A stretch of 63,047 bases of DNA, filler included, from Octopus bimaculoides (Eukaryota), in assembly GCF_001194135.2 (NCBI RefSeq). It is 6 parts of 6 records of this genome, joined end to end, with 100 filler letters (N's around TTAATTAATTAA, not from the genome) between each part and the next. Parts side by side here need not be neighbours in the genome. Positions count along the whole stretch, not along the records: positions 26,142 to 52,070 come from NC_068981.1; 5 more parts are not named here. The stretch is one strand, 5' to 3'. The position numbers and the translations under genes were made by a program. The stretch's first letter is position 1. Each line of letters starts with the position of its first letter. A model generated the notes under the pieces. It was given only the letters and a program-made list of their open reading frames with translations, ran no database searches and was not told where the DNA came from. Of this stretch, positions 27,657 through 51,779 are shown one piece after another.

Positions 27657-27717
27657 TTCAAGAAATCTTTCCTTTCTCTTTTCCAGATTATTCTTTCCTG
27701 CCTGAAACAATTCCAAG

Positions 27718-27772
27718 ATGTCCAATCCAAAATCATGGGGTCAGTCATTTGAGTTTCTCATCAGAAGTGAAG
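27718..27772 (+). CDS. RGS: RGS-domain protein, coding exon 1 (MSNPKSWGQSFEFLIRSE + first nt of Asp); exon begins at 27687 with 31 nt of presumed 5' UTR
   Basis: Polypyrimidine tract plus ttccAG acceptor ending at 27686; ATG at 27718; G|GTAAGG donor (phase 1). W-x-x-S-F-E-x-L matches RGS helix 1. G + AT of the next exon gives Asp in frame. Family-level name only; orthologue not identified. Confidence 0.85.
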
Positions 27773-27809
27773 GTAAGGGGACAACATATTTCGGTATTTT
27801 ATTCAGTTG

Positions 27810-28234
27810 TTTTTAGTGCACCCATGCTGGTGGCATGTAAAGAACACCTTTCGAACCTTGGGCGTCACAGAGGTAAAGTGGCTGAGTTCCTTTTGAGTGT
27901 TGGGCCTCACAGAGGCTATGACTGAGATCTTTGGCATTCTGTCGTGCTTGAGAAGACCCATCAAGCCAAGCAAAATCATAGTTGTGGCAGATACTGGTGT
28001 CACACAAATTGGTACTTGTGCTGGTGGTGCGTAAAAGCACCCCAGTGTTACACAAATGGCACATGTGCTGGTGGCACATAAAAGCACCCACTACACTCTC
28101 AGAGAGGTTGGCGTTAGGAAGGGCATCCAGCTTTATAAAACCATGCCAAATCAGACTGGAGTGTGGTGCAGCTTTCCAGTGTGCCAGCCCAGTCAAACCG
28201 TCCAACCCATACCAGCATGGACAACGGATGCTAA

Positions 28235-28265
<31 letters not shown>
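27810..28265 (+). mobile_element. RTE 3'-UTR copy with (GAT)n tail (RGS intron 1)
   Basis: Collinear with 8330-8790. Confidence 0.8.
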
Positions 28266-28269
<4 letters not shown>

Positions 28270-28329
28270 TATCTTTTGTTTCTCTTAGTATGTATATGTG
28301 GGGGAAGGGAGTAACAAGACACACTGTAC

Positions 28330-28590
28330 TCAGATATGTTGGCGGTGTCGGTGTCATCATATGAAGGAGTCCCTAATTTGTATACCGAAAGTGTTTAACA
28401 CTATAAATACCAGCAGCCTGTCAACGGGGATCTTAGTCCACACAGTATCAAAGTATGACATAATGAATATGTAACATATGGTATAATTATAAGCAAGGAA
28501 GATTTTAGCCATTTCTCCGCAGACTGAAAAAAATTATGAATAACTTTAATCGGTTTTTGAACCTTCTTGGGTTCTCATCAATATATATAT
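28330..28590 (-). mobile_element. Probable Penelope pLTR-like fragment with a degenerate hammerhead motif
   Basis: Minus strand reads TTGATGA-GAACC-caagaa-GGTTC-AAAAAC-CGATT; compare CTGATGA-stem II-GAAAC-CG-GT of PLE hammerheads. Confidence 0.4.
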
Positions 28591-28918
28591 CTATTTAAAT
28601 AAAGAAGTACTATTACTGTTATTAATGATAATAATAAGGTGGCTAGTAAGTTTACCCCTTTACAGGCAAAATATAAGCCAAATTTAGATTCAGTAGGGTG
28701 TTTAAATACCAATTGCTATAATCGGAGCCATTGCTCCAAAACCACCTACTGGATCTAAATTTGGTATAATTTGGTATAAATCTATCAAAGTAATTGTATA
28801 TTTATGTATATAACCTTATTTTGTTCCATTCTAAACAAAACTGTCCAATGAATGGGAACGAGAAACTCTGAGTAACAGTTTTTGTGATATTTTAGCTGCT
28901 TTTTTAATAAAGTGTGTG

Positions 28919-28961
<43 letters not shown>

Positions 28962-29217
28962 NNNNNNNNNNNNNNNNNNNNNNNNNNNNNNNNNNNNNNN
29001 NNNNNNNNNNNNNNNNNNNNNNNNNNNNNNNNNNNNNNNNNNNNNNNNNNNNNNNNNNNNNNNNNNNNNNNNNNNNNNNNNNNNNNNNNNNNNNNNNNNN
29101 NNNNNNNNNNNNNNNNNNNNNNNNNNNNNNNNNNNNNNNNNNNNNNNNNNNNNNNNNNNNNNNNNNNNNNNNNNNNNNNNNNNNNNNNNNNNNNNNNNNN
29201 NNNNNNNNNNNNNNNNN

Positions 29218-29248
<31 letters not shown>

Positions 29249-29468
29249 TTGTATATGTTTGTGTGTCTGTGTTTGTCCCCCAACATCGCTTGACAACCGA
29301 TGCTGGTGTGTTTACGTCCCTGTAACTTAGTGGTTCAGCAAAAGAGAGACTGATAGAATAAGTACTAGGCTTACAAAGGATAAGTCCTGGAGTCGATTTC
29401 TTCTACTAAAGGCAGTGCTCCAGCATGGCCACAGTCAAATGACTGAAACAAGTAAAAGAGTAAAAGAG
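29218..29468 (+). mobile_element. SINE family B, 3' half (RGS intron 1)
   Basis: Body and tail match family B; the 5' part is presumably in the adjacent gap. Confidence 0.8.
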
Positions 29469-29502
<34 letters not shown>

Positions 29503-29679
29503 TAGGGCAAAGAAGAAAATGGAGAAGATAATTAATTAACAAACATCAGCCTGCAAACATCCATTGGATCTATTAATTAATCACAATCATGTGTAAATAA
29601 AAAATAAAAAATAAGTAAATAAAAAAGTAAATGAATAGGAATAAATGAGTGAATAATACTATACTCTTACAGCTGTTTC

Positions 29680-29878
29680 TACTTTGGGGGTCCACCCTAC
29701 CAAATTTGGCACATCATATCAATATTATACAGAAATTATACAAAAGTTGAACAAAGGTTGGACAGTTAGAGAAGGGGTGCATATTATACACAAGGTTTAG
29801 GTTTTTCAGAGGTACAGCTCCCTAAAAATACCCTGCGTATTATACTTAAGGGCGGACTATACTCAAGGATTTACGGTA
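29680..29878. mobile_element. pogo/Tigger-like element fragment (one end)
   Basis: Ends tatactcaaggatttacgg-ta, resembling a pogo-type TIR plus TA; other end not seen. Confidence 0.4.
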
Positions 29879-30201
29879 GACATTTTTATATATAAGAACA
29901 TACTCTTTGTTTATCTTCAACTCATTATATCCATTTACACTTGTTTACAACAATTGCGTGATTAATTAGTGAAGGGTTAATGCATCTGGTATGTACCATA
30001 CTTGATAGCATTGTATGCACTTTTTTCTCTAAAATCACTCTTGGTCCTATTTACAAAGTAGAGTCTCCCATAAGCTTTAAAATATTAAGTGCCTTTTTCC
30101 CTGAATATGCATTGCTGAAATTGGGGTATGTCTAATATGCTCCTGTGTCTTTTATGTCATCAAATACAGTTTGCAATTTTACTGTTTTCTTTTATATCCA
30201 G

Positions 30202-30368
30202 ATGGTGTGCAACTGTTTAAGCAATATCTGAAAAGCCAATTCTGTGATGAGAACCTGGACTTTTGGCTTGCTGTAGAGAACTTTCGAGAGAATTTAGACG
30301 AGGATGAACTCACAAAGCAAGCTGGTATTATTGTGAAAACCTATGTTTCTAAAAAGGCCACCCGTGCT
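30202..30368 (+). CDS. RGS: RGS-domain protein, coding exon 2 (DGVQLFKQYLKSQFCDENLDFWLAVENFRENLDEDELTKQAGIIVKTYVSKKATRA)
   Basis: ttttcttttatatccAG acceptor and T|GTAAGT donor (phase 0). Contains the RGS hallmark G-x-x-x-F-x-x-Y-L ... F-x-x-EN-L-x-FW. Confidence 0.93.
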
Positions 30369-30449
30369 GTAAGTATTTTTGTAGTTAACTTTCTGTTAGA
30401 AGCTCTTGTAAGTAAAGTAAGCCCCTGGACATAGCTTTCTCAAGCCCTT

Positions 30450-30830
30450 GACCTTATAGGACCAATTATCCAGTTTCTATGGCGTATAAGTGACCGGATT
30501 GGCATACAAGGGTAAGAGGGTGACTCAAAAAATTACCTGGACAGAGGTCACAAGAGCCACATTTCATATTCAGCAATCAAAAGGATCAATAGGACAACTT
30601 GTACTGTGAATCCTGACTAATTAAAATTGGTTGTTCAGCCATATCAAAGGAAGTAACCAAGATCACAATATTTCCCCTGAACAGGACACCAGTCCATTTT
30701 AGGGTTACTATTTTACAGCTGAGTAGAATCCATATAAAATGAAGTGTTTTGCTCAAGAACATAATGCATCACTTGGTCCAGGAATTGAAACCATGATTTT
30801 GTGGTTATAAATGCAAAACCTTAACAACCC
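30450..30830 (-). mobile_element. Old tRNA-headed SINE (interrupted); related 3' piece at about 39895-39970
   Basis: gtgttttgctcaagaac...ggaattgaaacc resembles the 22445-22560 head; ttata(g/a)gacca...gttt(c)atggcgt(a/g)taag(t/c)gacc is shared with 39910-39950. Confidence 0.45.
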
Positions 30831-30859
30831 TTGTAAATCATTAATTATTTATCATCATC

Positions 30860-31145
30860 ATCATCATCATCATTGTTTAACATCCGTTTTCCATGATGGC
30901 ATGGGTTGAATGGTTTGACTGAGGACTGGCAAGCCAGGAGGCTGTATCCGGCTCCAATCTGATCTGGCAAGACTTTTACTGCTGGATGCCCTTCCTAACA
31001 CCAACCACTCCGAGAGTGTAGTGGGTGCGTTTTACATGCCATCAGCACGGGAGTCAGTCAGGCGGCACTGGCATTGACCATTCTCGGATGGTGCTTTTTA
31101 TGTGCCACCAGCATGGGTGCCAGTCAGGCAGCACTGGCATCGACC
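30860..31145 (-). mobile_element. RTE 3'-UTR copy (RGS intron 2)
   Basis: Reverse complement of the 35485-35650 type tail plus internal units. Confidence 0.8.
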
Positions 31146-31817
31146 ACATATTTATCAAAATGGATAATTTTACTTCATCTTTGTCTAATCTAATATAAAG
31201 TATAGCAGGAAATAAGATGGTGGTAAAGTTTAAAAAGTGATTATTGTCAAGTAGTGATATTGTATGCTATGAGCAGGAACTATTTGAAGTCTATCACAAT
31301 TGACTGGGTCGGAATGAGACAATTGGGTACAGCTGTTTGGATGTTGATGATCTGGCGCTACTGACTGGACATTCAGCCAGTTTTGGTAACAGTACTTTTT
31401 GGCACTGAAGGCAAACATCTACACATACACAAATACACACACACGTGCACACACAGACAGAAAAAGTGAGAGACTATAGTTTATTAATTGAAATTAAGTA
31501 CTTTCAATTCATTAATTTATTAATTGACATAAACACTTTCCTTCTTGTACATATAAAGAAAAATATACTCACACACATAGAGAGGATGGAGGGGGAGGNN
31601 NNNNNNNNNNNNNNNNNNNNNNNNNNNNNNNNNNNNNNNNNNNNNNNNNNNNNNNNNNNNNNNNNNNNNNNNNNNNNNNNNNNNNNNNNNNNNNNNNNNN
31701 NNNNNNNNNNNNNNNNNNNNNNNNNNNNNNNNNNNNNNNNNNNNNNNNNNNNNNNNNNNNNNNNNNNNNNNNNNNNNNNNNNNNNNNNNNNNNNNNNNNN
31801 NNNNNNNNNNNNNNNNN

Positions 31818-31890
31818 GGGGAGGGAGAGATGGGGAGGGAGAGATGGGGAGGGAGAGATGGGGAGGGAGAGATGGGGAGGGAGAGAGGGG
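31818..31890. repeat. 14-bp purine repeat (gggagagatgggga)n
   Basis: About 5 units next to a gap. Confidence 0.85.
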
Positions 31891-32189
31891 GAGGGATGAA
31901 GCGAAGGAAAGAGAAGGAGGGAAAAAGCAAGGGAAAGAGAGGGGAAGGGAGAGAAACATTAAGATATCTGATGTCAAATAAGTCAGCCTTGAATTAGCAA
32001 TGCCAAATTGATGGCATGAAAACGACTGTGCCAAAATGTGCCATACCTGCCTGGAGAGCCAGTAAGGAAGTCTCTTTGCAGTTGCTCTATGTACATGAAA
32101 AGGCAGACCCCCACCCTCTCCTGACCATTGCAAATCCTCCCAGATCAGTCAGAGTGATATTATTAATGTTCCTCTTGAACCTTTGTGAT

Positions 32190-32410
32190 TCAACACCTAA
32201 AAAAAGGGAGGAACAGGGAGAGAATTCCAGAGGGATGGCATCCTGGGAAGGAAGGACTGGGTGTAATGATTAGTGTGAGGCCTGGGAGTGGTTGGACATA
32301 ACAAAGATGATGGGAAGAGGAGAGATGAGTATGATGGTAGTGCCAGGATTGAGGGGACATCATCAGCCCAGCCAGTACAAAGGAGCAGAAGCCATTATAG
32401 TAGTGGGAGA
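32190..32410 (-). mobile_element. CR1/L2/Jockey-group LINE, C-terminal fragment
   Basis: Minus: YYNGFCS...LAGL, then in another frame TNHYTQSFLPRMPSLWNSLP (SFFPRT-x-x-LWN-x-LP motif). Confidence 0.55.
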
Positions 32411-32459
32411 AAAAGAAAAAGAAATACAAATAAAAGTTGAAAAAAAGTATTCAGTATGG

Positions 32460-32860
32460 TGCAGGTGTGGCTGTGTGGTAAGAAGTTTGCTTCCCAGCCA
32501 CATGGTTCTGAGTTCAGTCCCACTGCATGGGTAAGTGTCTTCTATTATATAGCCTTGGGCCAACCAGCCTTGTGAGAGAATTTCATAGACCGAAACTGTA
32601 AGGAGCCCATCGTGTGTGTGTGTGTGTGTGTGTATGTCAGTGTGTCTGTGGTTGTTTCCACCTCTGCTTGACAACCAATGTAAATGCGTTTATGTCCCTG
32701 TGACTTAGTGGTTCAGCAAAAGAGACCAATAGAATAAGTAAGTATCCGGCATTAAAAACAATTAAGTACTGGGATCAATTCATTCAACCAAAACTTCTTC
32801 AAGGTGGTGCCCCAGCATGGCCACAGTCAAATGACTGAAACAAGTAGAAGAAAGATAAAA
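32460..32860 (+). mobile_element. SINE family B (RGS intron 2)
   Basis: ggtgtggctgtgtggtaagaag...agttcagtccc...cagcatggccacagtcaaatgactgaaacaag. Confidence 0.8.
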
Positions 32861-33009
32861 GAAATGGCTAGATTAGCATAATTGTAGAGTATTGGATAAA
32901 ATGTTTTACAATGTTTAGCAATTTCCTTAAGAAGACACTTATCTCTGTCCCTCTATTAAGATTTAATCTCTCAACCTGCACACTGCCACCTCCCACATAC
33001 CACTCCCTC

Positions 33010-33270
33010 TCCCAGCTGAGAACGTCTTTGTCTTGCAAGTTACTTGGTAACCCCACTGATGCTGGTGCTACATAAAAAGCACCTGTGTTGCCACCACATA
33101 AAAAGCAACCTGTACATTCTGTAAAGTGGTTGGAGTTAGGAAAGGCACCCACCTGTAGAAACCATATCAAAGCAGACAACGGAGCCTGGTGCAGTTTTCT
33201 GGCTTGCCAACTCCTGTCAAACTATCTGACCCATACCAGCATGGAAAATAGACATTAAATAATGATGATA
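33010..33270 (+). mobile_element. RTE 3'-UTR-type tail (RGS intron 2)
   Basis: tctttgtcttgcaagttacttgg...gctggtgctacataaaaagcac...ggagcctggtgcag...ccataccagcatggaaaatagacattaaataatgatg. Confidence 0.7.
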
Positions 33271-33397
33271 AAGTTTGGCTTTTATTCTTTTGGGGGATGA
33301 TAAAATATAAGTCAAATATTGATGTAGATAAAATTGACTAAACTGCCTCTTCAAATTCCAGACTATTTTTATCTTCTCTTTCTTTTTACATTTTCAG

Positions 33398-33562
33398 GTA
33401 AATCTTAAGGCCCCAAACAGAGAGAGAACAGTAAAGGCTGTTGAAGCAAATGCTCATAGAAACGTCTTTGATGATGCCCAAAAGGAAATCTATGACTTCA
33501 TGCAACGAGATCCCTATGTTCGATTTTTGAAATCTGAACAATATGCCAACGCATGTGCATAA
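33398..33562 (+). CDS. RGS: RGS-domain protein, terminal coding exon (VNLKAPNRERTVKAVEANAHRNVFDDAQKEIYDFMQRDPYVRFLKSEQYANACA*)
   Basis: Long polypyrimidine tract plus ttttcAG, phase 0 and in frame with exon 2. RGS C-terminal signature VN-L ... F-x-x-AQ-x-x-I-x-x-x-M-x-x-D-x-Y-x-RFL-x-S; TAA at 33560-33562. Missed by the ORF track because it has no start codon. Confidence 0.93.
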   Translation, partial: VNLKAPNRERTVKAVEANAHRNVFDDAQKEIYDFMQRDPYVRFLKSEQYANACA

Positions 33563-33930
33563 GTGCTCATTTAAATTAATATACATATATATATATTCTC
33601 CCATTTCTTTGTATTTTATCAGAGCTTTATATATATACAATTATTTTACAATAACTAGAATATCTGGTATCACAAGTTATTGAAATAATAGTGGAAATAT
33701 AAGATAGAAGAGACTGGATTTAAAGAGGCATAACTAATATATCCAAAGTGCAGTCTGAAGATGAATTTTCTCTCTTTTGTACATCATTGTTTTACTATAT
33801 GATTGTATTGTATAATGTATGTTCATATATATTGTATATATATTTCTGCATCAAAGTTAATAGTTTAACTCAGAGTAAATTATGAAACCTGTAGATTCTA
33901 CAGAAATATTAAAATTCATTGCCTCTCACA
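33563..33930 (+). other. Probable 3' UTR of the RGS gene
   Basis: AT-rich non-repetitive sequence after the stop; possible variant poly(A) signal ATTAAA at 33908-33913. True end unknown. Confidence 0.35.
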
Positions 33931-34664: not shown

Positions 34665-35484
34665 AGTGAGATAATCAGTGTACAAATTAACAAACCATTA
34701 CTAATAGTTTTATGACAACAGAGTCAAAAACCTTATCAATCTTTGCTAGTCTTATATTGTCCAAAGATTGGTTAACTTTTTAACTCTGCTATGAACTATG
34801 AATAGTGATATGTTAGTTCATAGACATGAGAGTAAGAAACAGAAAGTGAAAAGAGTACCTAATATTTAAAGAAGAGTGATAGAATTTATTGGAAGCTGAA
34901 CGTTGTTCTGAGTTTCTTGATGCTGATCTTCAGATGATTATGAAAAAAAAAAAAATAGAACATAAGAATTTCATACATAAAGAATATACAATAAAAATTT
35001 CTGAATTTCACATCAACTGCTGGTTGACTGGCTGGTTGGTTGGTTGGTTGGTATGGAATTATAAAGGATTACGATTGGTCAATGATTTCACTGTTGTCTG
35101 AATGGTAGATGTTTAGTATGAAATGAAAACAGACATGATTTTTATAATGCAATATGGTATGTACGAAAGCATATATGTTTATATATGAAAAGCATATAAT
35201 ATATATTTTGCATATATTTTTTATATATGAAAAACATATAATATATATTGACTATGTATACATGCACACACACATAAATAAACACACAGACACACATATA
35301 CATACAAGCTTTTTTGTATGCATACATAAATGTAAAAGAAAATAAAAGAGCAAGACTTGAACTGATTAGTGTCATTAAAAGCAGAGATTTAAACAAAATC
35401 GTATTATTCCTAGACGCTTTTGTCATCAACCTTACGACTTATTTCGCTCTGACCAAGAATTTCTTTAGGGAGAATACTTTTTCC

Positions 35485-35650
35485 GGAGTGGTTGGCGTTA
35501 GGAAGGGCATCCAGCTGTAGAAACTCTGCCAAATCAGATTGGAGCCTGGTGTAGCCATCTGGTTCACCAGTCCTCAGTCAAATCGTCCAACCCATGCTAG
35601 CATGGAAAGCGGACGTTAAACGATGATGATGATGATGATGATGATGATGA
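35485..35650 (+). mobile_element. Young RTE 3'-UTR tail with (GAT)n
   Basis: ggagtggttggcgttaggaagggcatccagctgtagaaactctgccaaatcagattggagcctgg...gcggacgttaaacgatgatgatg. Confidence 0.85.
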
Positions 35651-45655: not shown

Positions 45656-46095
45656 TGCCATAACTCTTCGAAACGTTTAGTTTTAGAATGGTGGCAGCTG
45701 ATGGAGGAAATGTTCTCTATATGGCCTGTGTGTTTTCTGTGCTCTATTTATGTTCTTTTTCGCATTTTGTCCACGTTTTTTTGTAACGTCCTGTACCCAG
45801 ATATGCATCTATATACACATGTAGATGTAGGTATGTACATACATGTACGTATATATGCATATACTCACGTATTATTTGTATTATATATATATATATATAT
45901 ATNNNNNNNNNNNNNNNNNNNNNNNNNNNNNNNNNNNNNNNNNNNNNNNNNNNNNNNNNNNNNNNNNNNNNNNNNNNNNNNNNNNNNNNNNNNNNNNNNN
46001 NNNNNNNNNNNNNNNNNNNNNNNNNNNNNNNNNNNNNNNNNNNNNNNNNNNNNNNNNNNNNNNNNNNNNNNNNNNNNNNNNNNNNNNNNNNNNNA

Positions 46096-46425
46096 ATCGA
46101 CCCCAGGACTTATTCTTTGTAAGCTTAGTACTTATTCTATTGGTCTCTCTTGCCGAACCGCTAAGTTACAGAGATGTAAACACACCAGCATCAGTTGTCA
46201 AGCGATGTTGTGGGGGACAAACAGACACAAACACACACATAATATATATACATATACATACATATGATGGGCTTCTTTCAGTTTCCGTCTACCAAATCCA
46301 CTCACAAAGCTTTGGTCGGCCTGAGGCTATAGTAGAAAACACTTGCCCAAGGTGCTACACAGTGGGACTGAATCCAGAAGCATGTGGTTGGTAAGCAAGC
46401 CACTTACCACACAGCCACTCCTGCA
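46096..46425 (-). mobile_element. SINE family B
   Basis: Collinear with 16664-17112; 3' end lost in a gap. Confidence 0.8.
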
Positions 46426-46464
46426 CCTATATATATATATATATATTTATACACACACCACCGA

Positions 46465-46878
46465 GACCTTTGGAAATGTGCTGTGCGTGAGAAGACCCGG
46501 CAAGCCAAGTAAGATCGTTGCCAGTGCCCCTGGACTGGCTCTTGTGCAGGTGGCACATGAGATGCACCATTTTGAGCGTGGCCGTTGCCAGTACCGCCTG
46601 ACTGGCTCCCGTAGGATTTTCGAGCGAGATCGTTGCCAGTGCCCCTGGACTGGCTTGTGCGGGTGGCACATAAAAGACACCATTTCGAGCGTGGCCGTTT
46701 TCGTGCGGGTGACACGTAAAAGCACCCACTACACTCTCTGAGTGGTTGGCGTTAGGAAGAGCATCTAGCTGTAGAAACTCTGCCAAATTAGATTGGAGCC
46801 TGGTGTTGCCATCCGGTTTCACCAGTCCTCAGTCAAATCGTCCAACCCATGCTAGCATGGAAAGCGGACGTTTAAACG
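46465..46878 (+). mobile_element. Young 5'-truncated RTE copy: last codons plus 3' UTR with tandem units of about 62 bp
   Basis: accgagacctttggaaatgtg (identical to the ORF end at 5301-5321), repeated gatcgttgccagtgcccctggactggct units, then the standard tail. Confidence 0.85.
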
Positions 46879-47105
46879 ATATCCTTGGCCTGAAGAGTAA
46901 ACTGCAGTGTTCACCTCGCTTGGATATTTACTATTTCCGAGGTTCCGCCCACTTTGAAACATATGTAGCCCGGATCTTATCTACTCCATTCCTTAACTCT
47001 TGTATTCTTATTCACACACCAAGCAACCCTGGTTGCCTACCATGAAATACAAAAAGAACATTTCTCAGTTCATTGTACTTCAATACAAAAAAAAAATACA
47101 AAAAA

Positions 47106-47505
47106 GAGTGGTTGTGTGGTAAGTAGCTTGCTTACCAACCACATGGTTCTAGGTTCAGTCCCACTGTATGGCATCTTGGGCAAGTGTCTTCTACTGTAGC
47201 CTCGGGCCAACCAAAGCCTTGTGAGTGGATTTGGTAGACGGAAACTGAAAGAAGCCCATCGTATATATGTATATATATATGTATGTGTGTGCATATGTTT
47301 GTGTGTCTGTGTTTGTCCCCCCAGCATCATTTGACAACCAATGCTGGTGCGTTTACGTCTCCATAACTTAGCGGTTCAGTAAGAGAAACCGATAGAATAA
47401 GTACTAGGCTTACAAAGAATAAGTCCTGGGGTCAATTTACTTGACTAAAGGCGGTGCTCCAGCATGGCCGCAGTCAATTGACTGAAACAAATAAAAGAGT
47501 AAAAG
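47106..47505 (+). mobile_element. tRNA-derived SINE 'family B', full length
   Basis: gagtggttgtgtggtaagtagcttgc...ggttcagtccc...ggcaagtgtcttctact...cagcatggccgcagtcaattgactgaaacaaataaaagagtaaaag. Further copies at about 4200-4355(-), 18390-18540(-), 42730-42820(-), 61497-61623(-). Confidence 0.88.
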
Positions 47506-47599
47506 GGTAACCTTCTGTCCCAATAAACCACTATTGTCCCTGAAAGTTGTTGTTTATATTTACTACGGATTGCTTGATGCCAACTTTCTTCCTACACCT

Positions 47600-47712: not shown

Positions 47713-48338
47713 ATATATAGCCACTCTTTCTTTCTCTGAGCATCTTATTAATACTTTGCATGTGTTACATCCTCACGTTTTTTTTTCTTGTCTTTTTTTT
47801 CTCTTGTGTTAATTAACTATATATATGTGTGTGTGTGTGTGTGTGTTTCTTGAGAAGGGAGGACACCCCAAACCAGGCAAGATGGTGAGATGCTGTGAGG
47901 GTGGTTGGTATGGCATTGAGGTAGATCTGGCCACTCCCATTGACGAAGACAAAACCCGGATTCAAAATGATGGATGATGTTGATGATGAAAGCTCCTTCC
48001 CAAGCCATAGTATTCTGAGGTGTATATAATCCCTCCTCCCACTGGACAGGATGCCAGAGCATGACTGTGTTGTGAGGTACTTTCTGTTATGGTTGTTCGT
48101 TGATGCTTGGGGAGGATGAAAATGCCTTTCTAGGGCTGCATGTAAAATGATAAACAACACTGATGAACAGTTAACAGAAGCTTTATTTACTGCATATAGT
48201 TTTTTTGCTCTATGTTGGTCTTGGGATGAAGAATAAAAGCAACAACTTGTACACACAGGGAGAGACATAATACTGGAGTCTGTGTCAAAATAGCTGCTAG
48301 TACCAATTTGTGATGAACCCATGGCAACTAGGAAAATA

Positions 48339-48893
48339 CGAGGGTGAGTCAAAAAGTAATGCCATTTTGTTTAGGAGAAGTATAATTACTAACACAGAAA
48401 CATGTATCATACATCAAAATGAAGCTGGTCCTCTGTGGATCACATCCTTACTTCTCAACATAGTCACCGTTTCTTTCAATAGCAATGTTCCACCTTCGAA
48501 TGAGAGCATGTATCCCTGCCCCCTAAAATTCTGTTGACTGTTCTTTGAGCCACTTCTTCACTACAGTTTTCACTTCCTCATCACTGGAATAATGTTTGCC
48601 TCTCAAACCCTCTTTCATGAGATGATAGTCCAGTGATGATGATAGTCCAGTGACGAGGAAGTGAAAACTAGTGAAGAAGTGGCTCAAAGGAAAATCAACA
48701 GAATTTTATGGGGCAGGGATACATGGTCTCATTCGAAGGTGGAACATTGCTATTGAGAGAAACGGTGACTATGTTGAGAAGTAGGGATGTGATCCACAAA
48801 GGACCAGCTTCATTTTGATGTATGATACATGTTCCTGTGTTGGTAATTATACCTCTCTTAAACAAAATGGCATTACTTTTTGACTCACCCTTG
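48339..48893. mobile_element. Mariner-derived 555-bp palindromic MITE with TA target-site duplication
   Basis: TA|cgagggtgagtcaaaaagtaatgcc...ggcattactttttgactcacccttg|TA with near-perfect arms of about 250 bp. The right arm reads VKKWLKGKSTEFYGAGIHGLIRRWNIAIERNGDYVEK*, a mariner transposase C-terminus. Confidence 0.88.
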
Positions 48894-51394: not shown

Positions 51395-51501
51395 AATTTA
51401 TTAAAAAAGACAGAGAAAATGAGCCACAAAATATATCAGACCATGGACAAGTAAACCCAAATGACACTAAAGACAAATACAATAAATGGAAAGAGTCCTT
51501 T
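51395..51501 (+). CDS. Candidate internal coding exon of an unidentified gene (xFIKKDRENEPQNISDHGQVNPNDTKDKYNKWKESF)
   Basis: Very strong acceptor (tttttttctttctttcttttttttcAG), TTT|GTAAGC donor, open frame (phase 1 to phase 0), 107 nt. Short, so a chance or non-coding exon is possible. Confidence 0.4.
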
Positions 51502-51779
51502 GTAAGCATGATAAATGATGATGGTAGGTAAAACCATGCCTAAACTAATTACAATACAAAATAAAATTCAATATATTATTGGTTGAACATCTTGAGTGCT
51601 CAAATCCTGCTAATATCAGTTTTTATTAACGGAGACCCAGATACACTATCAGCATCCTCCTCCTCATCATCATCTTTCTTTCAGTCTGTCAACTTCTTTT
51701 ATTTTCCTCTTTCTCTTCTTCATGTTATTCTTATTCTTTTCTTCTTGCTCTTGTTTTTTCACTTTTCTACTTGTTGCCA

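What the first reader, a model, noticed from the sequence alone, without database searches (positions are those of the whole stretch)
27687..33562. A 128-aa 'domain-only' RGS gene, with no targeting or accessory domains
Seen: three exons with canonical splice sites join in frame (55+167+165 nt) to MSNPKSWGQSFEFLIRSEDGVQLFKQYLKSQFCDENLDFWLAVENFRENLDEDELTKQAGIIVKTYVSKKATRAVNLKAPNRERTVKAVEANAHRNVFDDAQKEIYDFMQRDPYVRFLKSEQYANACA*. An in-frame TGA (27703-27705) lies 15 nt before the ATG in the same exon, so this splice form cannot be N-terminally extended. Known: RGS proteins normally carry an N-terminal amphipathic helix (R4), a cysteine string (RZ), DEP/GGL (R7) or PDZ/PTB/RBD/GoLoco (R12), and the smallest human member, RGS21, is about 150 aa. 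Inference: this is a minimal, probably cytosolic GAP that starts 6 residues before the helix 1 Trp, possibly a lineage-specific RGS used in sensory GPCR signalling.
Basis: partly seen in the sequence, partly recalled or inferred. Interest (0 to 1): 0.7.

Follow-up and report, generated by a model that had tools for sequence, protein, structure and literature searches.

The report
Box-only RGS gene of octopus
This is a real, expressed and conserved cephalopod gene for a 128-residue protein that is nothing but an RGS (G-protein switch-off) domain; it is already in RefSeq under an automatic name, and it is a mild curiosity rather than a new kind of system.

Summary
Exons 27718-27772, 30202-30368 and 33398-33562 (+) have canonical AG/GT sites and join to 128 aa covering the whole Pfam RGS profile (E 1e-30). 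An in-frame TGA lies 15 nt before the ATG. Both assembly gaps are intronic. Gapless orthologous loci in O. sinensis, O. vulgaris and Argonauta hians show the same 55/167/165 structure.

The window is Octopus bimaculoides. The protein is identical to RefSeq XP_014784320.1 ("regulator of G-protein signaling 4"), so the model is already public. The UniProt model (95 aa) runs into intron 2.

Sepia esculenta RNA-seq contigs and a poly(A) metatranscript carry 126-127-aa orthologues with several in-frame stops in the 5'UTR. dN/dS is 0.05-0.25. The AF2 model (pLDDT 95) superposes on the human RGS1 box (TM 0.94-0.96), and the residues I recall as the main Galpha contacts are kept.

The closest relatives are 350-489-aa cephalopod RGS proteins whose N-terminal part resembles gastropod and bivalve long RGS proteins. 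The short gene therefore looks like a coleoid-specific partial duplicate of the box exons. A second small RGS gene lies in tandem at 48.3-51.5 kb.

"Cytosolic" and "sensory" remain untested. Interest is low to moderate.

The parts
27687..27772 (+). First coding exon: 5'UTR part 27687-27717, which holds the in-frame TGA at 27703-27705, then ATG 27718 and 55 nt of CDS (MSNPKSWGQSFEFLIRSE + 1 nt, phase 1).
   Evidence: The acceptor TTTCCAG|ATTATT is invariant in O. bimaculoides, O. sinensis, O. vulgaris and Argonauta, while sequence upstream of it diverges. The donor is GTAAGG.
27773..30201 (+). Intron 1, containing assembly gap 28962-29217 and repeat copies.
   Evidence: The orthologous intron is gapless in L008, L009 and L010 and holds no RGS-like coding sequence.
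30202..30368 (+). Middle coding exon, 167 nt (DGVQLFKQY...KKATRA).
   Evidence: The same 167-nt exon with AG/GT borders is present in L008, L009 and L010.
30369..33397 (+). Intron 2, containing assembly gap 31599-31817. It carries about 2 kb of repeat-rich sequence that the blastn hits do not place in O. vulgaris.
   Evidence: window 30530 maps to L009 12288 and window 32612 maps to L009 12367. The UniProt model A0A0L8G576 (P0005, 95 aa) reads through this donor into the intron.
33398..33562 (+). Last coding exon, 162 nt plus TAA (VNLKAP...YANACA*). It holds the catalytic-site Asn (N76) and the conserved penultimate Cys127.
33908..33913 (+). ATTAAA, the only poly(A)-signal-like hexamer between the stop codon and the next gap. 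It is a possible 3' end, not shown to be used.
   Evidence: pattern only.
48313..48343 (+). Exon 1 of a second, tandem RGS gene (paralogue B, XP_014784321.1, 163 aa): MNPWQLGKYE + 1 nt, donor GTGAGT.
51395..51523 (+). Exon 2 of paralogue B (EFIKKDREN...KWKESFVSMINDD + 1 nt). It ends in phase 1 at the same position of helix 1 as exon 1 of the 128-aa gene. The rest of the gene lies beyond the end of the piece.

Best explanation
The locus is a bona fide three-coding-exon gene of Octopus bimaculoides. It encodes a 15-kDa protein that consists only of a complete nine-helix RGS box, most similar to the R4 type.

Shown here:
- The gene structure is conserved in octopods.
- The short ORF is closed by upstream stops.
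- It is transcribed in a cuttlefish.
- It is under purifying selection.
- It folds, in silico, like the RGS1/RGS4 boxes.
- By alignment to RGS4 it keeps the residues I recall as the main Galpha contacts (equivalents of E87, N88, N128, D163, R167).

Inferred:
- It acts as a GTPase-activating protein on GTP-bound Galpha subunits of the i/o and/or q classes, by stabilising the switch regions in the transition state.
- It has no N-terminal amphipathic helix, cysteine string or partner domain. Its access to membrane-bound Galpha must therefore come from expression level, from direct affinity for activated Galpha, from a binding partner, or from acylation of the conserved Cys next to the C-terminus.

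Likely origin: a partial duplication in the coleoid cephalopod stem lineage of the three box-encoding 3' exons of a long molluscan RGS gene. A Met codon that the cephalopod long gene also has 6 codons before the helix-1 Trp serves as the start.
For: - Gene model.
- Identity to RefSeq XP_014784320.1.
- Annotated 128-aa orthologues in O. vulgaris and A. hians.
- Identical exon structure in three gapless genomes.
- Conserved acceptor and in-frame stop before the ATG.
- Spliced mRNA contigs with a complete 126-127-aa ORF, multiple in-frame stops in the 5'UTR, and a poly(A) tail on L007.
- One of those runs, SRR19578107, is Sepia esculenta.
- dN/dS is 0.18-0.25 within Octopus, 0.05 Octopus versus Argonauta, and 0.10 between the two transcript-derived (presumed decapodiform) orthologues.
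- The best PDB sequence matches are RGS1, RGS4, RGS3 and RGS2 (E 1e-24 to 1e-22), with the contact residues aligned.
- AF2 gives mean pLDDT 95.1 and nine helical elements.
- Foldseek gives TM 0.94-0.96 and rmsd 0.7-0.9 A to human RGS1, alone and in complex with Gi-alpha1.
- Origin: the box is 56-61% identical to cephalopod long RGS proteins but at most 41% identical to the Haliotis, Crassostrea and vertebrate sequences compared and at most 46% to any other representative. The cephalopod short and long boxes form one NJ clade.
- The N-terminal part of the cephalopod long protein shares motifs with the Haliotis and Crassostrea long RGS proteins, seen in the sequences.
- No upstream coding exons were found in 10 kb of three species.
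- In O. vulgaris the upstream neighbour is a kinesin gene on the minus strand; the part inside the locus ends 6 kb before the ATG.
Against: - No O. bimaculoides transcript was available here, so the two junctions and the 5'UTR exon are supported only by conservation, by the RefSeq model and by mRNAs from other cephalopods.
- GAP activity, target Galpha class, localisation and tissue are all untested.
- A box-only RGS2 construct left in the cytosol did not inhibit Gq signalling in cells (PMC11388284). A bare box may therefore be a weak regulator unless something recruits it.
- Some positions differ from R4 proteins: RGS4 S85 is Cys here, C95 is Val, S164 is Pro and D130 is Lys.
- The duplication scenario rests on an unbootstrapped NJ tree and on identity values. 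The exon structure of the long gene could not be read.
Confidence: 0.75

Rival explanations
1. The 128-aa ORF is only the 3' part of a longer protein. Upstream coding exons, outside the piece or hidden in a gap, would splice to an acceptor downstream of the TGA, for example the AG at 27716-27717, to give a normal R4-like or long RGS.
For: - Only about 1.5 kb upstream of the exon lies inside the piece.
- An AG sits directly before the ATG.
- The closest relatives are 350-489 aa.
- The 10 kb upstream in O. bimaculoides contains two gaps.
Against: - The AG before the ATG is AA in Argonauta, whereas the acceptor at 27686 is invariant.
- Every species has an in-frame stop 3-5 codons before the ATG.
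- Cuttlefish and metatranscriptome mRNAs run through 160-330 nt of stop-rich 5'UTR.
- tblastn with the long proteins finds nothing in the gapless 10 kb upstream of O. sinensis and O. vulgaris.
- The long paralogue is a separate gene on another chromosome in Argonauta.
- RefSeq models the gene as 128 aa in O. bimaculoides and in A. hians.
Confidence: 0.05
2. The protein binds activated Galpha but works mainly as something other than a catalytic GAP. It could be an effector antagonist or buffer that sequesters Galpha-GTP, or a competitor that modulates the long paralogue or the tandem paralogue B.
For: - It has no targeting region.
- A cytosolic box-only RGS2 was ineffective against Gq signalling in cells (PMC11388284).
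- Several surface substitutions relative to R4 boxes are shared by the cephalopod clade: LAVE for LACE, NLKAP for NLDS, RDPY for KDSY.
Against: - The Asn that inserts into the Galpha active site and the other core contact residues are conserved.
- The fold is indistinguishable from GAP-competent boxes.
- Isolated RGS boxes are catalytically active in vitro (my own knowledge of the RGS4, RGS10 and GAIP box studies, not checked here).
Confidence: 0.12
3. The locus is a decaying partial duplicate, that is a pseudogene or transcriptional noise with no function.
For: It looks like a partial copy of a larger gene and lacks the regions that usually give R4 proteins their potency.
Against: - The ORF is intact and the same length in Octopus (three species), Argonauta, Sepia and one further cephalopod transcript.
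- dN/dS is 0.05-0.25.
- The Sepia protein is indexed in 99 blocks of the Logan run-assembly collection, and the 24 contigs read all carry it.
Confidence: 0.02

Closest known systems
Vertebrate R4/B subfamily RGS proteins (RGS1, RGS4, RGS2, RGS3 box, RGS8, RGS16, RGS18, RGS21)
   Same: - They give the best sequence matches (about 32-38% identity) and the best structural matches.
- They are small proteins dominated by the RGS box.
- By alignment to RGS4, the equivalents of E87, N88, N128, D163 and R167 are kept.
- The gene lies in a tandem cluster of small RGS genes, as R4 genes do in vertebrates (the vertebrate part is my own knowledge).
   Different: - There is no N-terminal amphipathic helix and no N-terminal Cys residues. 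Only 6 residues precede the helix-1 Trp, against roughly 20-60 in R4 proteins. Human RGS21, about 152 aa, is the shortest I know of (own knowledge).
- The Cys at the RGS4 Cys95 position is Val here.
- It is not an orthologue of RGS4 or RGS1 despite the RefSeq names. It sits in a cephalopod-only clade.
Molluscan long RGS proteins (Argonauta hians LOC115212653 456 aa; cephalopod transcripts 350-489 aa; Haliotis rubra LOC124284213 471 aa; Crassostrea gigas LOC105344015 377-479 aa)
   Same: - The cephalopod long proteins have the most similar RGS box (60-61% identity).
- Their box sits at the extreme C-terminus.
- They share the ...Y(A/L)N(A/T)C tail and a Met 6 residues before the helix-1 Trp.
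   Different: - They carry a 220-360-residue Ser/Arg-rich N-terminal region, with motifs such as RRFFHRMIPRPLRRSHS and FLRRHHTDSSL, that the 128-aa protein lacks entirely.
- In Argonauta the long gene is a separate, roughly 210-kb gene on another chromosome.
Engineered minimal RGS domains (e.g. RGS2 delta1-53 in the PiGM-Iq optogenetic tool, PMC11388284)
   Same: Same architecture: an RGS box with no targeting region.
   Different: The engineered box is inert in the cytosol and needs artificial membrane recruitment. The octopus protein is a natural gene kept under selection, so it presumably has its own way to reach Galpha. That way is unknown.
Paralogue B in the same window (XP_014784321.1, 163 aa)
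   Same: - It is a tandem neighbour on the same strand.
- It has the same phase-1 intron in helix 1, the RDPY motif and a Cys near the C-terminus.
- The tandem pair is also present in Argonauta.
   Different: - Its box is only 46% identical.
- It has about 41 extra N-terminal residues encoded by an additional 5' exon and a longer homologous exon. A newer RefSeq model (XP_052829148.1, 115 aa) omits them.

Membership tests
RGS domain superfamily (Pfam PF00615) | Full-length match to the RGS profile above the curated threshold | tested here: met
   106.9 bits against a cut-off of 23.9, E 1.1e-30, profile positions 1-116 of 117, residues 10-125.
RGS domain superfamily (Pfam PF00615) | Nine-helix RGS-box fold | tested here: met
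   AF2 mean pLDDT 95.1, pTM 0.88, nine helical elements. Foldseek TM 0.94-0.96 and rmsd 0.7-0.9 A to human RGS1 (2bv1, 2gtp). All top hits are RGS boxes. This is a prediction, not an experiment.
RGS domain superfamily (Pfam PF00615) | Conserved Galpha switch-region contact residues (RGS4 numbering, recalled by me: E87, N88, N128, D163, R167) | tested here: met
   The alignment to RGS4 (1agr_E, 1ezt) pairs ...CDENLDFW with ...SEENIDFW, AVNLKA with EVNLDS, and RDPYVRFLKS with KDSYRRFLKS. S85 is Cys (the residue I recall at this position in RGS2) and S164 is Pro.
RGS domain superfamily (Pfam PF00615) | GTPase-accelerating activity on a Galpha subunit | not testable with these tools
   Needs a single-turnover GTPase assay with recombinant protein.
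R4/B subfamily | RGS box most similar to R4 boxes | tested here: met
   The top PDB sequence hits are RGS1, RGS4, RGS3, RGS2, RGS18, RGS8 and RGS16, ahead of RZ, R7 and R12 members.
R4/B subfamily | Short N-terminal region with an amphipathic membrane-binding helix, often with palmitoylated Cys | tested here: not met
   Only MSNPKS precedes the helix-1 Trp, with no Cys or Gly2. The ORF is closed by an in-frame stop 15 nt upstream.
R4/B subfamily | Orthology to a named vertebrate member (RefSeq calls it RGS4 or RGS1-like) | tested here: not met
   In the NJ tree and identity matrix it groups with the cephalopod long and short RGS proteins (56-61% to the long ones). It is at most 41% identical to the other RGS boxes in that matrix, including a vertebrate RGS1-like protein. 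The tree is not bootstrapped.
RZ/A, R7/C, R12/D subfamilies | Cysteine string; DEP/GGL; PDZ/PTB/RBD/GoLoco | tested here: not met
   Pfam finds only the RGS domain. With 128 aa there is no room for another domain.

The most novel reading that the evidence does not exclude
Coleoid cephalopods have kept, since before octopods and decapodiforms split, a natural 'RGS box only' protein made by partial duplication of a long RGS gene. Bare RGS boxes are ineffective in the cytosol of cells, so it may use an undescribed way to reach Galpha. Candidates are acylation of the conserved penultimate Cys (AC-A/Q/K) or a dedicated partner. It may tune the Gq- or Go-heavy signalling of the cephalopod nervous and visual systems. 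If so, it would be the smallest self-sufficient RGS known and a ready-made minimal GAP module.
Probability: 0.2. Interest if true: 0.5.

Novelty: new member of a known kind. Interest (0 to 1): 0.3.

Why it matters
- It corrects a public UniProt model (95 aa, read into an intron).
- It shows that the automatic names "RGS4" and "RGS1-like" do not reflect orthology.
- It documents a small cephalopod-specific family of minimal RGS genes derived from a long molluscan RGS gene.
- For RGS biology, a naturally box-only member under purifying selection is a handy test case. It asks how much of an RGS protein's cellular potency needs the flanking regions. It also offers a compact GAP module.
- It does not reveal a new mechanism or a new kind of system.

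Tried and rejected
- Finding the 5'UTR exon. I aligned Sepia and metatranscriptome mRNAs to octopus and Argonauta genomic DNA, but only the coding exons align. Octopus versus Argonauta upstream DNA shares only repeats. The TSS and UTR exon remain unlocated.
- Finding hidden N-terminal exons. tblastn with the long paralogues and with paralogue B found nothing credible against the piece or against 10 kb upstream in O. sinensis, O. vulgaris and O. bimaculoides. There is one E of about 0.05-0.09 hit inside a repeat at L012 3498-3581.
- Reading the exon structure of the long paralogue. No DNA was returned because the gene spans about 210 kb.
- Closing the gaps with the chromosome-scale O. bimaculoides assembly. 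It has the same sequence and the same gaps.
- Rfam scan of the piece: no hits.
- ORF list of the piece: only repeat- or gap-derived ORFs apart from the RGS exons.
- Literature. No paper on a cephalopod RGS of this kind turned up. I found no open-access sentence stating that RGS21 is the smallest RGS, so that statement stays as my own knowledge.
- Pseudogene and 'fragment of a longer gene' readings were considered and rejected on conservation and transcript evidence.


Full report
**1. The observation**

ATG 27718 runs to 27772 (donor GTAAGG). The second exon is 30202-30368 (acceptor ...TATATCCAG, donor GTAAGT). The third is 33398-33562 (acceptor ...ATTTTCAG, stop TAA). They are 55+167+165 nt and translate to the 128-aa sequence given. 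TGA 27703-27705 is in frame, 15 nt before the ATG. The product matches the Pfam RGS profile end to end (positions 1-116 of 117, E 1.1e-30).

**2. The assembly gaps**

Both flagged gaps are intronic. The chromosome-scale O. bimaculoides assembly (L012, CM046601.1:184040801-184066645) is identical to the window base for base (0 mismatches in 15,199 positions) and carries the same gaps. It therefore cannot settle continuity.

Three gapless orthologous loci do settle it: O. sinensis L008, O. vulgaris L009 and Argonauta hians L010. They are collinear with the window around all three exons. A search for exons of exactly 55/167/165 nt with AG/GT borders recovers the annotated 128-aa proteins in all three. 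The protein aligns to solved RGS boxes with indels of at most two residues, so no exon is missing.

**3. Identity of the sequence and state of annotation**

The window is Octopus bimaculoides.

The UniProt entry A0A0L8G576 (P0005, 95 aa) is the same gene, but after exon 2 it reads into intron 2 (...ATRAV|SIFVVNFLLEALVSKVSPWT). That is a mis-annotation.

Annotated 128-aa orthologues exist in O. vulgaris (95% identity) and Argonauta hians (86%, 'RGS1-like'). The gene model is therefore already public. What has not been described, as far as searches show, is its box-only nature.

**4. Is the ORF really this short?**

The alignment of the exon-1 region in four octopod genomes shows that conservation begins at the polypyrimidine tract and the acceptor TTTCCAG|ATTATT (27686/27687), while sequence upstream of it diverges. 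Each genome has an in-frame stop between this acceptor and the ATG: TGA in Octopus, TAA in Argonauta. The AG directly before the ATG in Octopus is AA in Argonauta, so it is not a conserved alternative acceptor.

Independent mRNA evidence comes from relatives. Six Logan RNA-seq contigs of 1.2-1.3 kb (L001-L006) carry an uninterrupted 126-aa orthologue (P0004). That protein is indexed in 99 blocks of the Logan collection. Its 5'UTR is 220-330 nt and contains six or more in-frame stops, the last two immediately before the ATG. A JGI metatranscriptome contig with a poly(A) tail (L007) carries a 127-aa orthologue with three in-frame stops upstream. Run SRR19578107 is juvenile Sepia esculenta (PMC9538352). 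The short form therefore exists in Decapodiformes as well as Octopodiformes.

tblastn with the N-terminal regions of longer relatives finds no exon in the piece or in 10 kb upstream in three Octopus genomes. In O. vulgaris the upstream neighbour is a kinesin gene on the minus strand; the part of it inside the locus ends 6 kb before the ATG.

No O. bimaculoides transcript could be examined, and the 5'UTR exon was not located.

**5. Is it functional?**

dN/dS (NG86) is 0.18-0.25 between Octopus species, 0.05 between Octopus and Argonauta, and 0.10 between the two transcript-derived orthologues. This indicates purifying selection.

The AF2 model has mean pLDDT 95.1 with nine helical elements starting at residue 4. 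Foldseek places it on human RGS1 (2bv1, and 2gtp in complex with Gi-alpha1) at TM 0.94-0.96 and rmsd 0.7-0.9 A. RGS2, RGS8, RGS9, RGS16, RGS3 and RGS4 follow.

By sequence the best solved relatives are R4 members: RGS1 at 8e-24, then RGS4, RGS3, RGS2, RGS18, RGS8 and RGS16. In the printed alignment to RGS4 the equivalents of E87, N88, N128, D163 and R167 are present. The RGS4 numbering and the contact roles of these residues are from my own knowledge. S85 is Cys, the residue I recall at this position in RGS2. C95 is Val, D130 is Lys and S164 is Pro.

I infer a GAP for Galpha-i/o and/or -q. The activity itself is untested.

**6. Where it comes from**

An exhaustive HMMER scan of 1.84 billion representatives finds only six proteins at E<=1e-30. 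Three of them have two matched stretches each, so their scores are summed over more than one RGS domain.

The closest two (60-61% identity over residues 2-127) are long proteins with the box at the extreme C-terminus: P0007 (350 aa) and P0008 (456 aa, Argonauta 'LOC115212653 isoform X1'). In Argonauta the long gene spans about 210 kb on a different chromosome from the 128-aa gene.

The N-terminal part of the long protein shares motifs with Haliotis rubra LOC124284213 and Crassostrea gigas LOC105344015 (RRFFHRMIPRPLRRSHS; FLRRHHTDSSL). Their boxes, however, are only 31-41% identical to the short proteins.

In an NJ tree (no bootstrap) the short gene, the tandem paralogue B and the cephalopod long genes form one clade, apart from all other RGS boxes sampled.

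The cephalopod long proteins read ...MVNAAKWGKSF, with a Met at the same distance (6 residues) from the helix-1 Trp as the start Met of MSNPKSWGQSF. Haliotis and Crassostrea have no Met there.

The simplest reading is a partial, DNA-level duplication of the three box exons in the coleoid stem lineage, with that Met used as the initiator. No short orthologue was seen outside cephalopods. Among the 150 best representatives, the only entries under 140 aa besides P0006 are two N-terminally truncated fragments.

**7. Surroundings**

A second RGS gene starts 14.7 kb downstream on the same strand. Its exon 1 is 48313-48343 and its exon 2 is 51395-51523. They encode residues 1-53 of XP_014784321.1 (P0012, 163 aa, 46% identical in the box), and the rest lies beyond the piece.

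Its exon 2 ends in phase 1 at the same helix-1 position as exon 1 of the 128-aa gene, so the intron is homologous. A second RGS gene also follows the 128-aa gene in Argonauta (L010 20198-21524).

The rest of the piece is repeat-rich, with gaps flanked by simple repeats. It has no Rfam hit and no other credible ORF.

**8. Mechanism and open point**

R4 proteins owe much of their potency and receptor selectivity in cells to the N-terminal region (my own knowledge). In PMC11388284 an RGS2 box lacking residues 1-53 was cytosolic and did not reduce Gq-driven calcium signals. It did so only when tethered or light-recruited to the membrane.

A natural box-only RGS under selection must therefore do one of four things:
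- be abundant;
- bind activated Galpha tightly;
- have a partner;
- be lipid-anchored.

The only candidate feature I see is a Cys 1-5 residues from the C-terminus. It is conserved in the short gene (ACA, ACQ, ACK), in the long paralogues (ACKP, ACKS, TCKSSS) and in paralogue B (LCT). It is not a CaaX box, and acylation is speculation.

**9. Verdict**

This is a real, correctly modelled, conserved and expressed gene, and an unusually small RGS protein. It is a new member of a known kind, already present in RefSeq under an automatic and misleading name. It has a plausible origin by partial duplication and an open question about how it reaches its substrate. Interest is low to moderate.

Noticed in passing
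window 48313-48343 and 51395-51523 (+): These are the first two exons of a second, tandem RGS gene (XP_014784321.1, 163 aa, 'RGS4-like'), which has about 41 residues before the helix-1 Trp. The gene runs off the end of the piece. A newer RefSeq model of the same gene (XP_052829148.1, 115 aa) starts at an internal Met inside helix 1.
   Followed up: partly
window 30369-30434 (+): UniProt A0A0L8G576_OCTBM (95 aa) is this gene with the exon-2 donor ignored. It reads 20 codons into intron 2 and stops, which is a public mis-annotation.
   Followed up: yes
L011 86-472 (Logan SRR5253657 contig): The 118-aa protein P0006 was called from an internal ATG. The open frame actually starts 10 codons upstream with MSNPRAWSRS, preceded by two stops. 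That gives another 128-aa box-only RGS with the same MSNPxxW start (54% identical to the octopus one). It is probably a further paralogue in another cephalopod. The species was not identified.
   Followed up: partly
L010 20198-20368 and 21363-21524 (Argonauta hians): A second RGS gene lies about 6 kb downstream of the Argonauta 128-aa gene on the same strand, so the tandem pair is conserved among octopods.
   Followed up: partly
L009 1-3982 (O. vulgaris, minus strand): A kinesin gene (PF00225) is the upstream neighbour, on the opposite strand. The part inside the locus ends about 6 kb before the ATG of the RGS gene.
   Followed up: no
window 27997-28206, 29221-29470, 30851-31146, 32463-32912, 35484-35650, 46095-46440, 46703-46880, 47106-47510 and others: Many copies of a few short interspersed repeat families, each matching several places in the O. 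sinensis and O. vulgaris loci. There is also a short tandem array at 27997-28206. Most assembly gaps are flanked by di- or tri-nucleotide-like simple repeats, which show up as YIYIYI or CVCVCV in ORF translations.
   Followed up: no
window 33554-33556 (Cys127 codon); C-termini of P0001-P0004, P0007, P0008, P0156, P0012: A Cys 1-5 residues from the C-terminus is conserved across the short, long and B cephalopod RGS paralogues. It is absent from the Haliotis and Crassostrea long RGS proteins. It is not a CaaX motif; it could be an acylation site.
   Followed up: no
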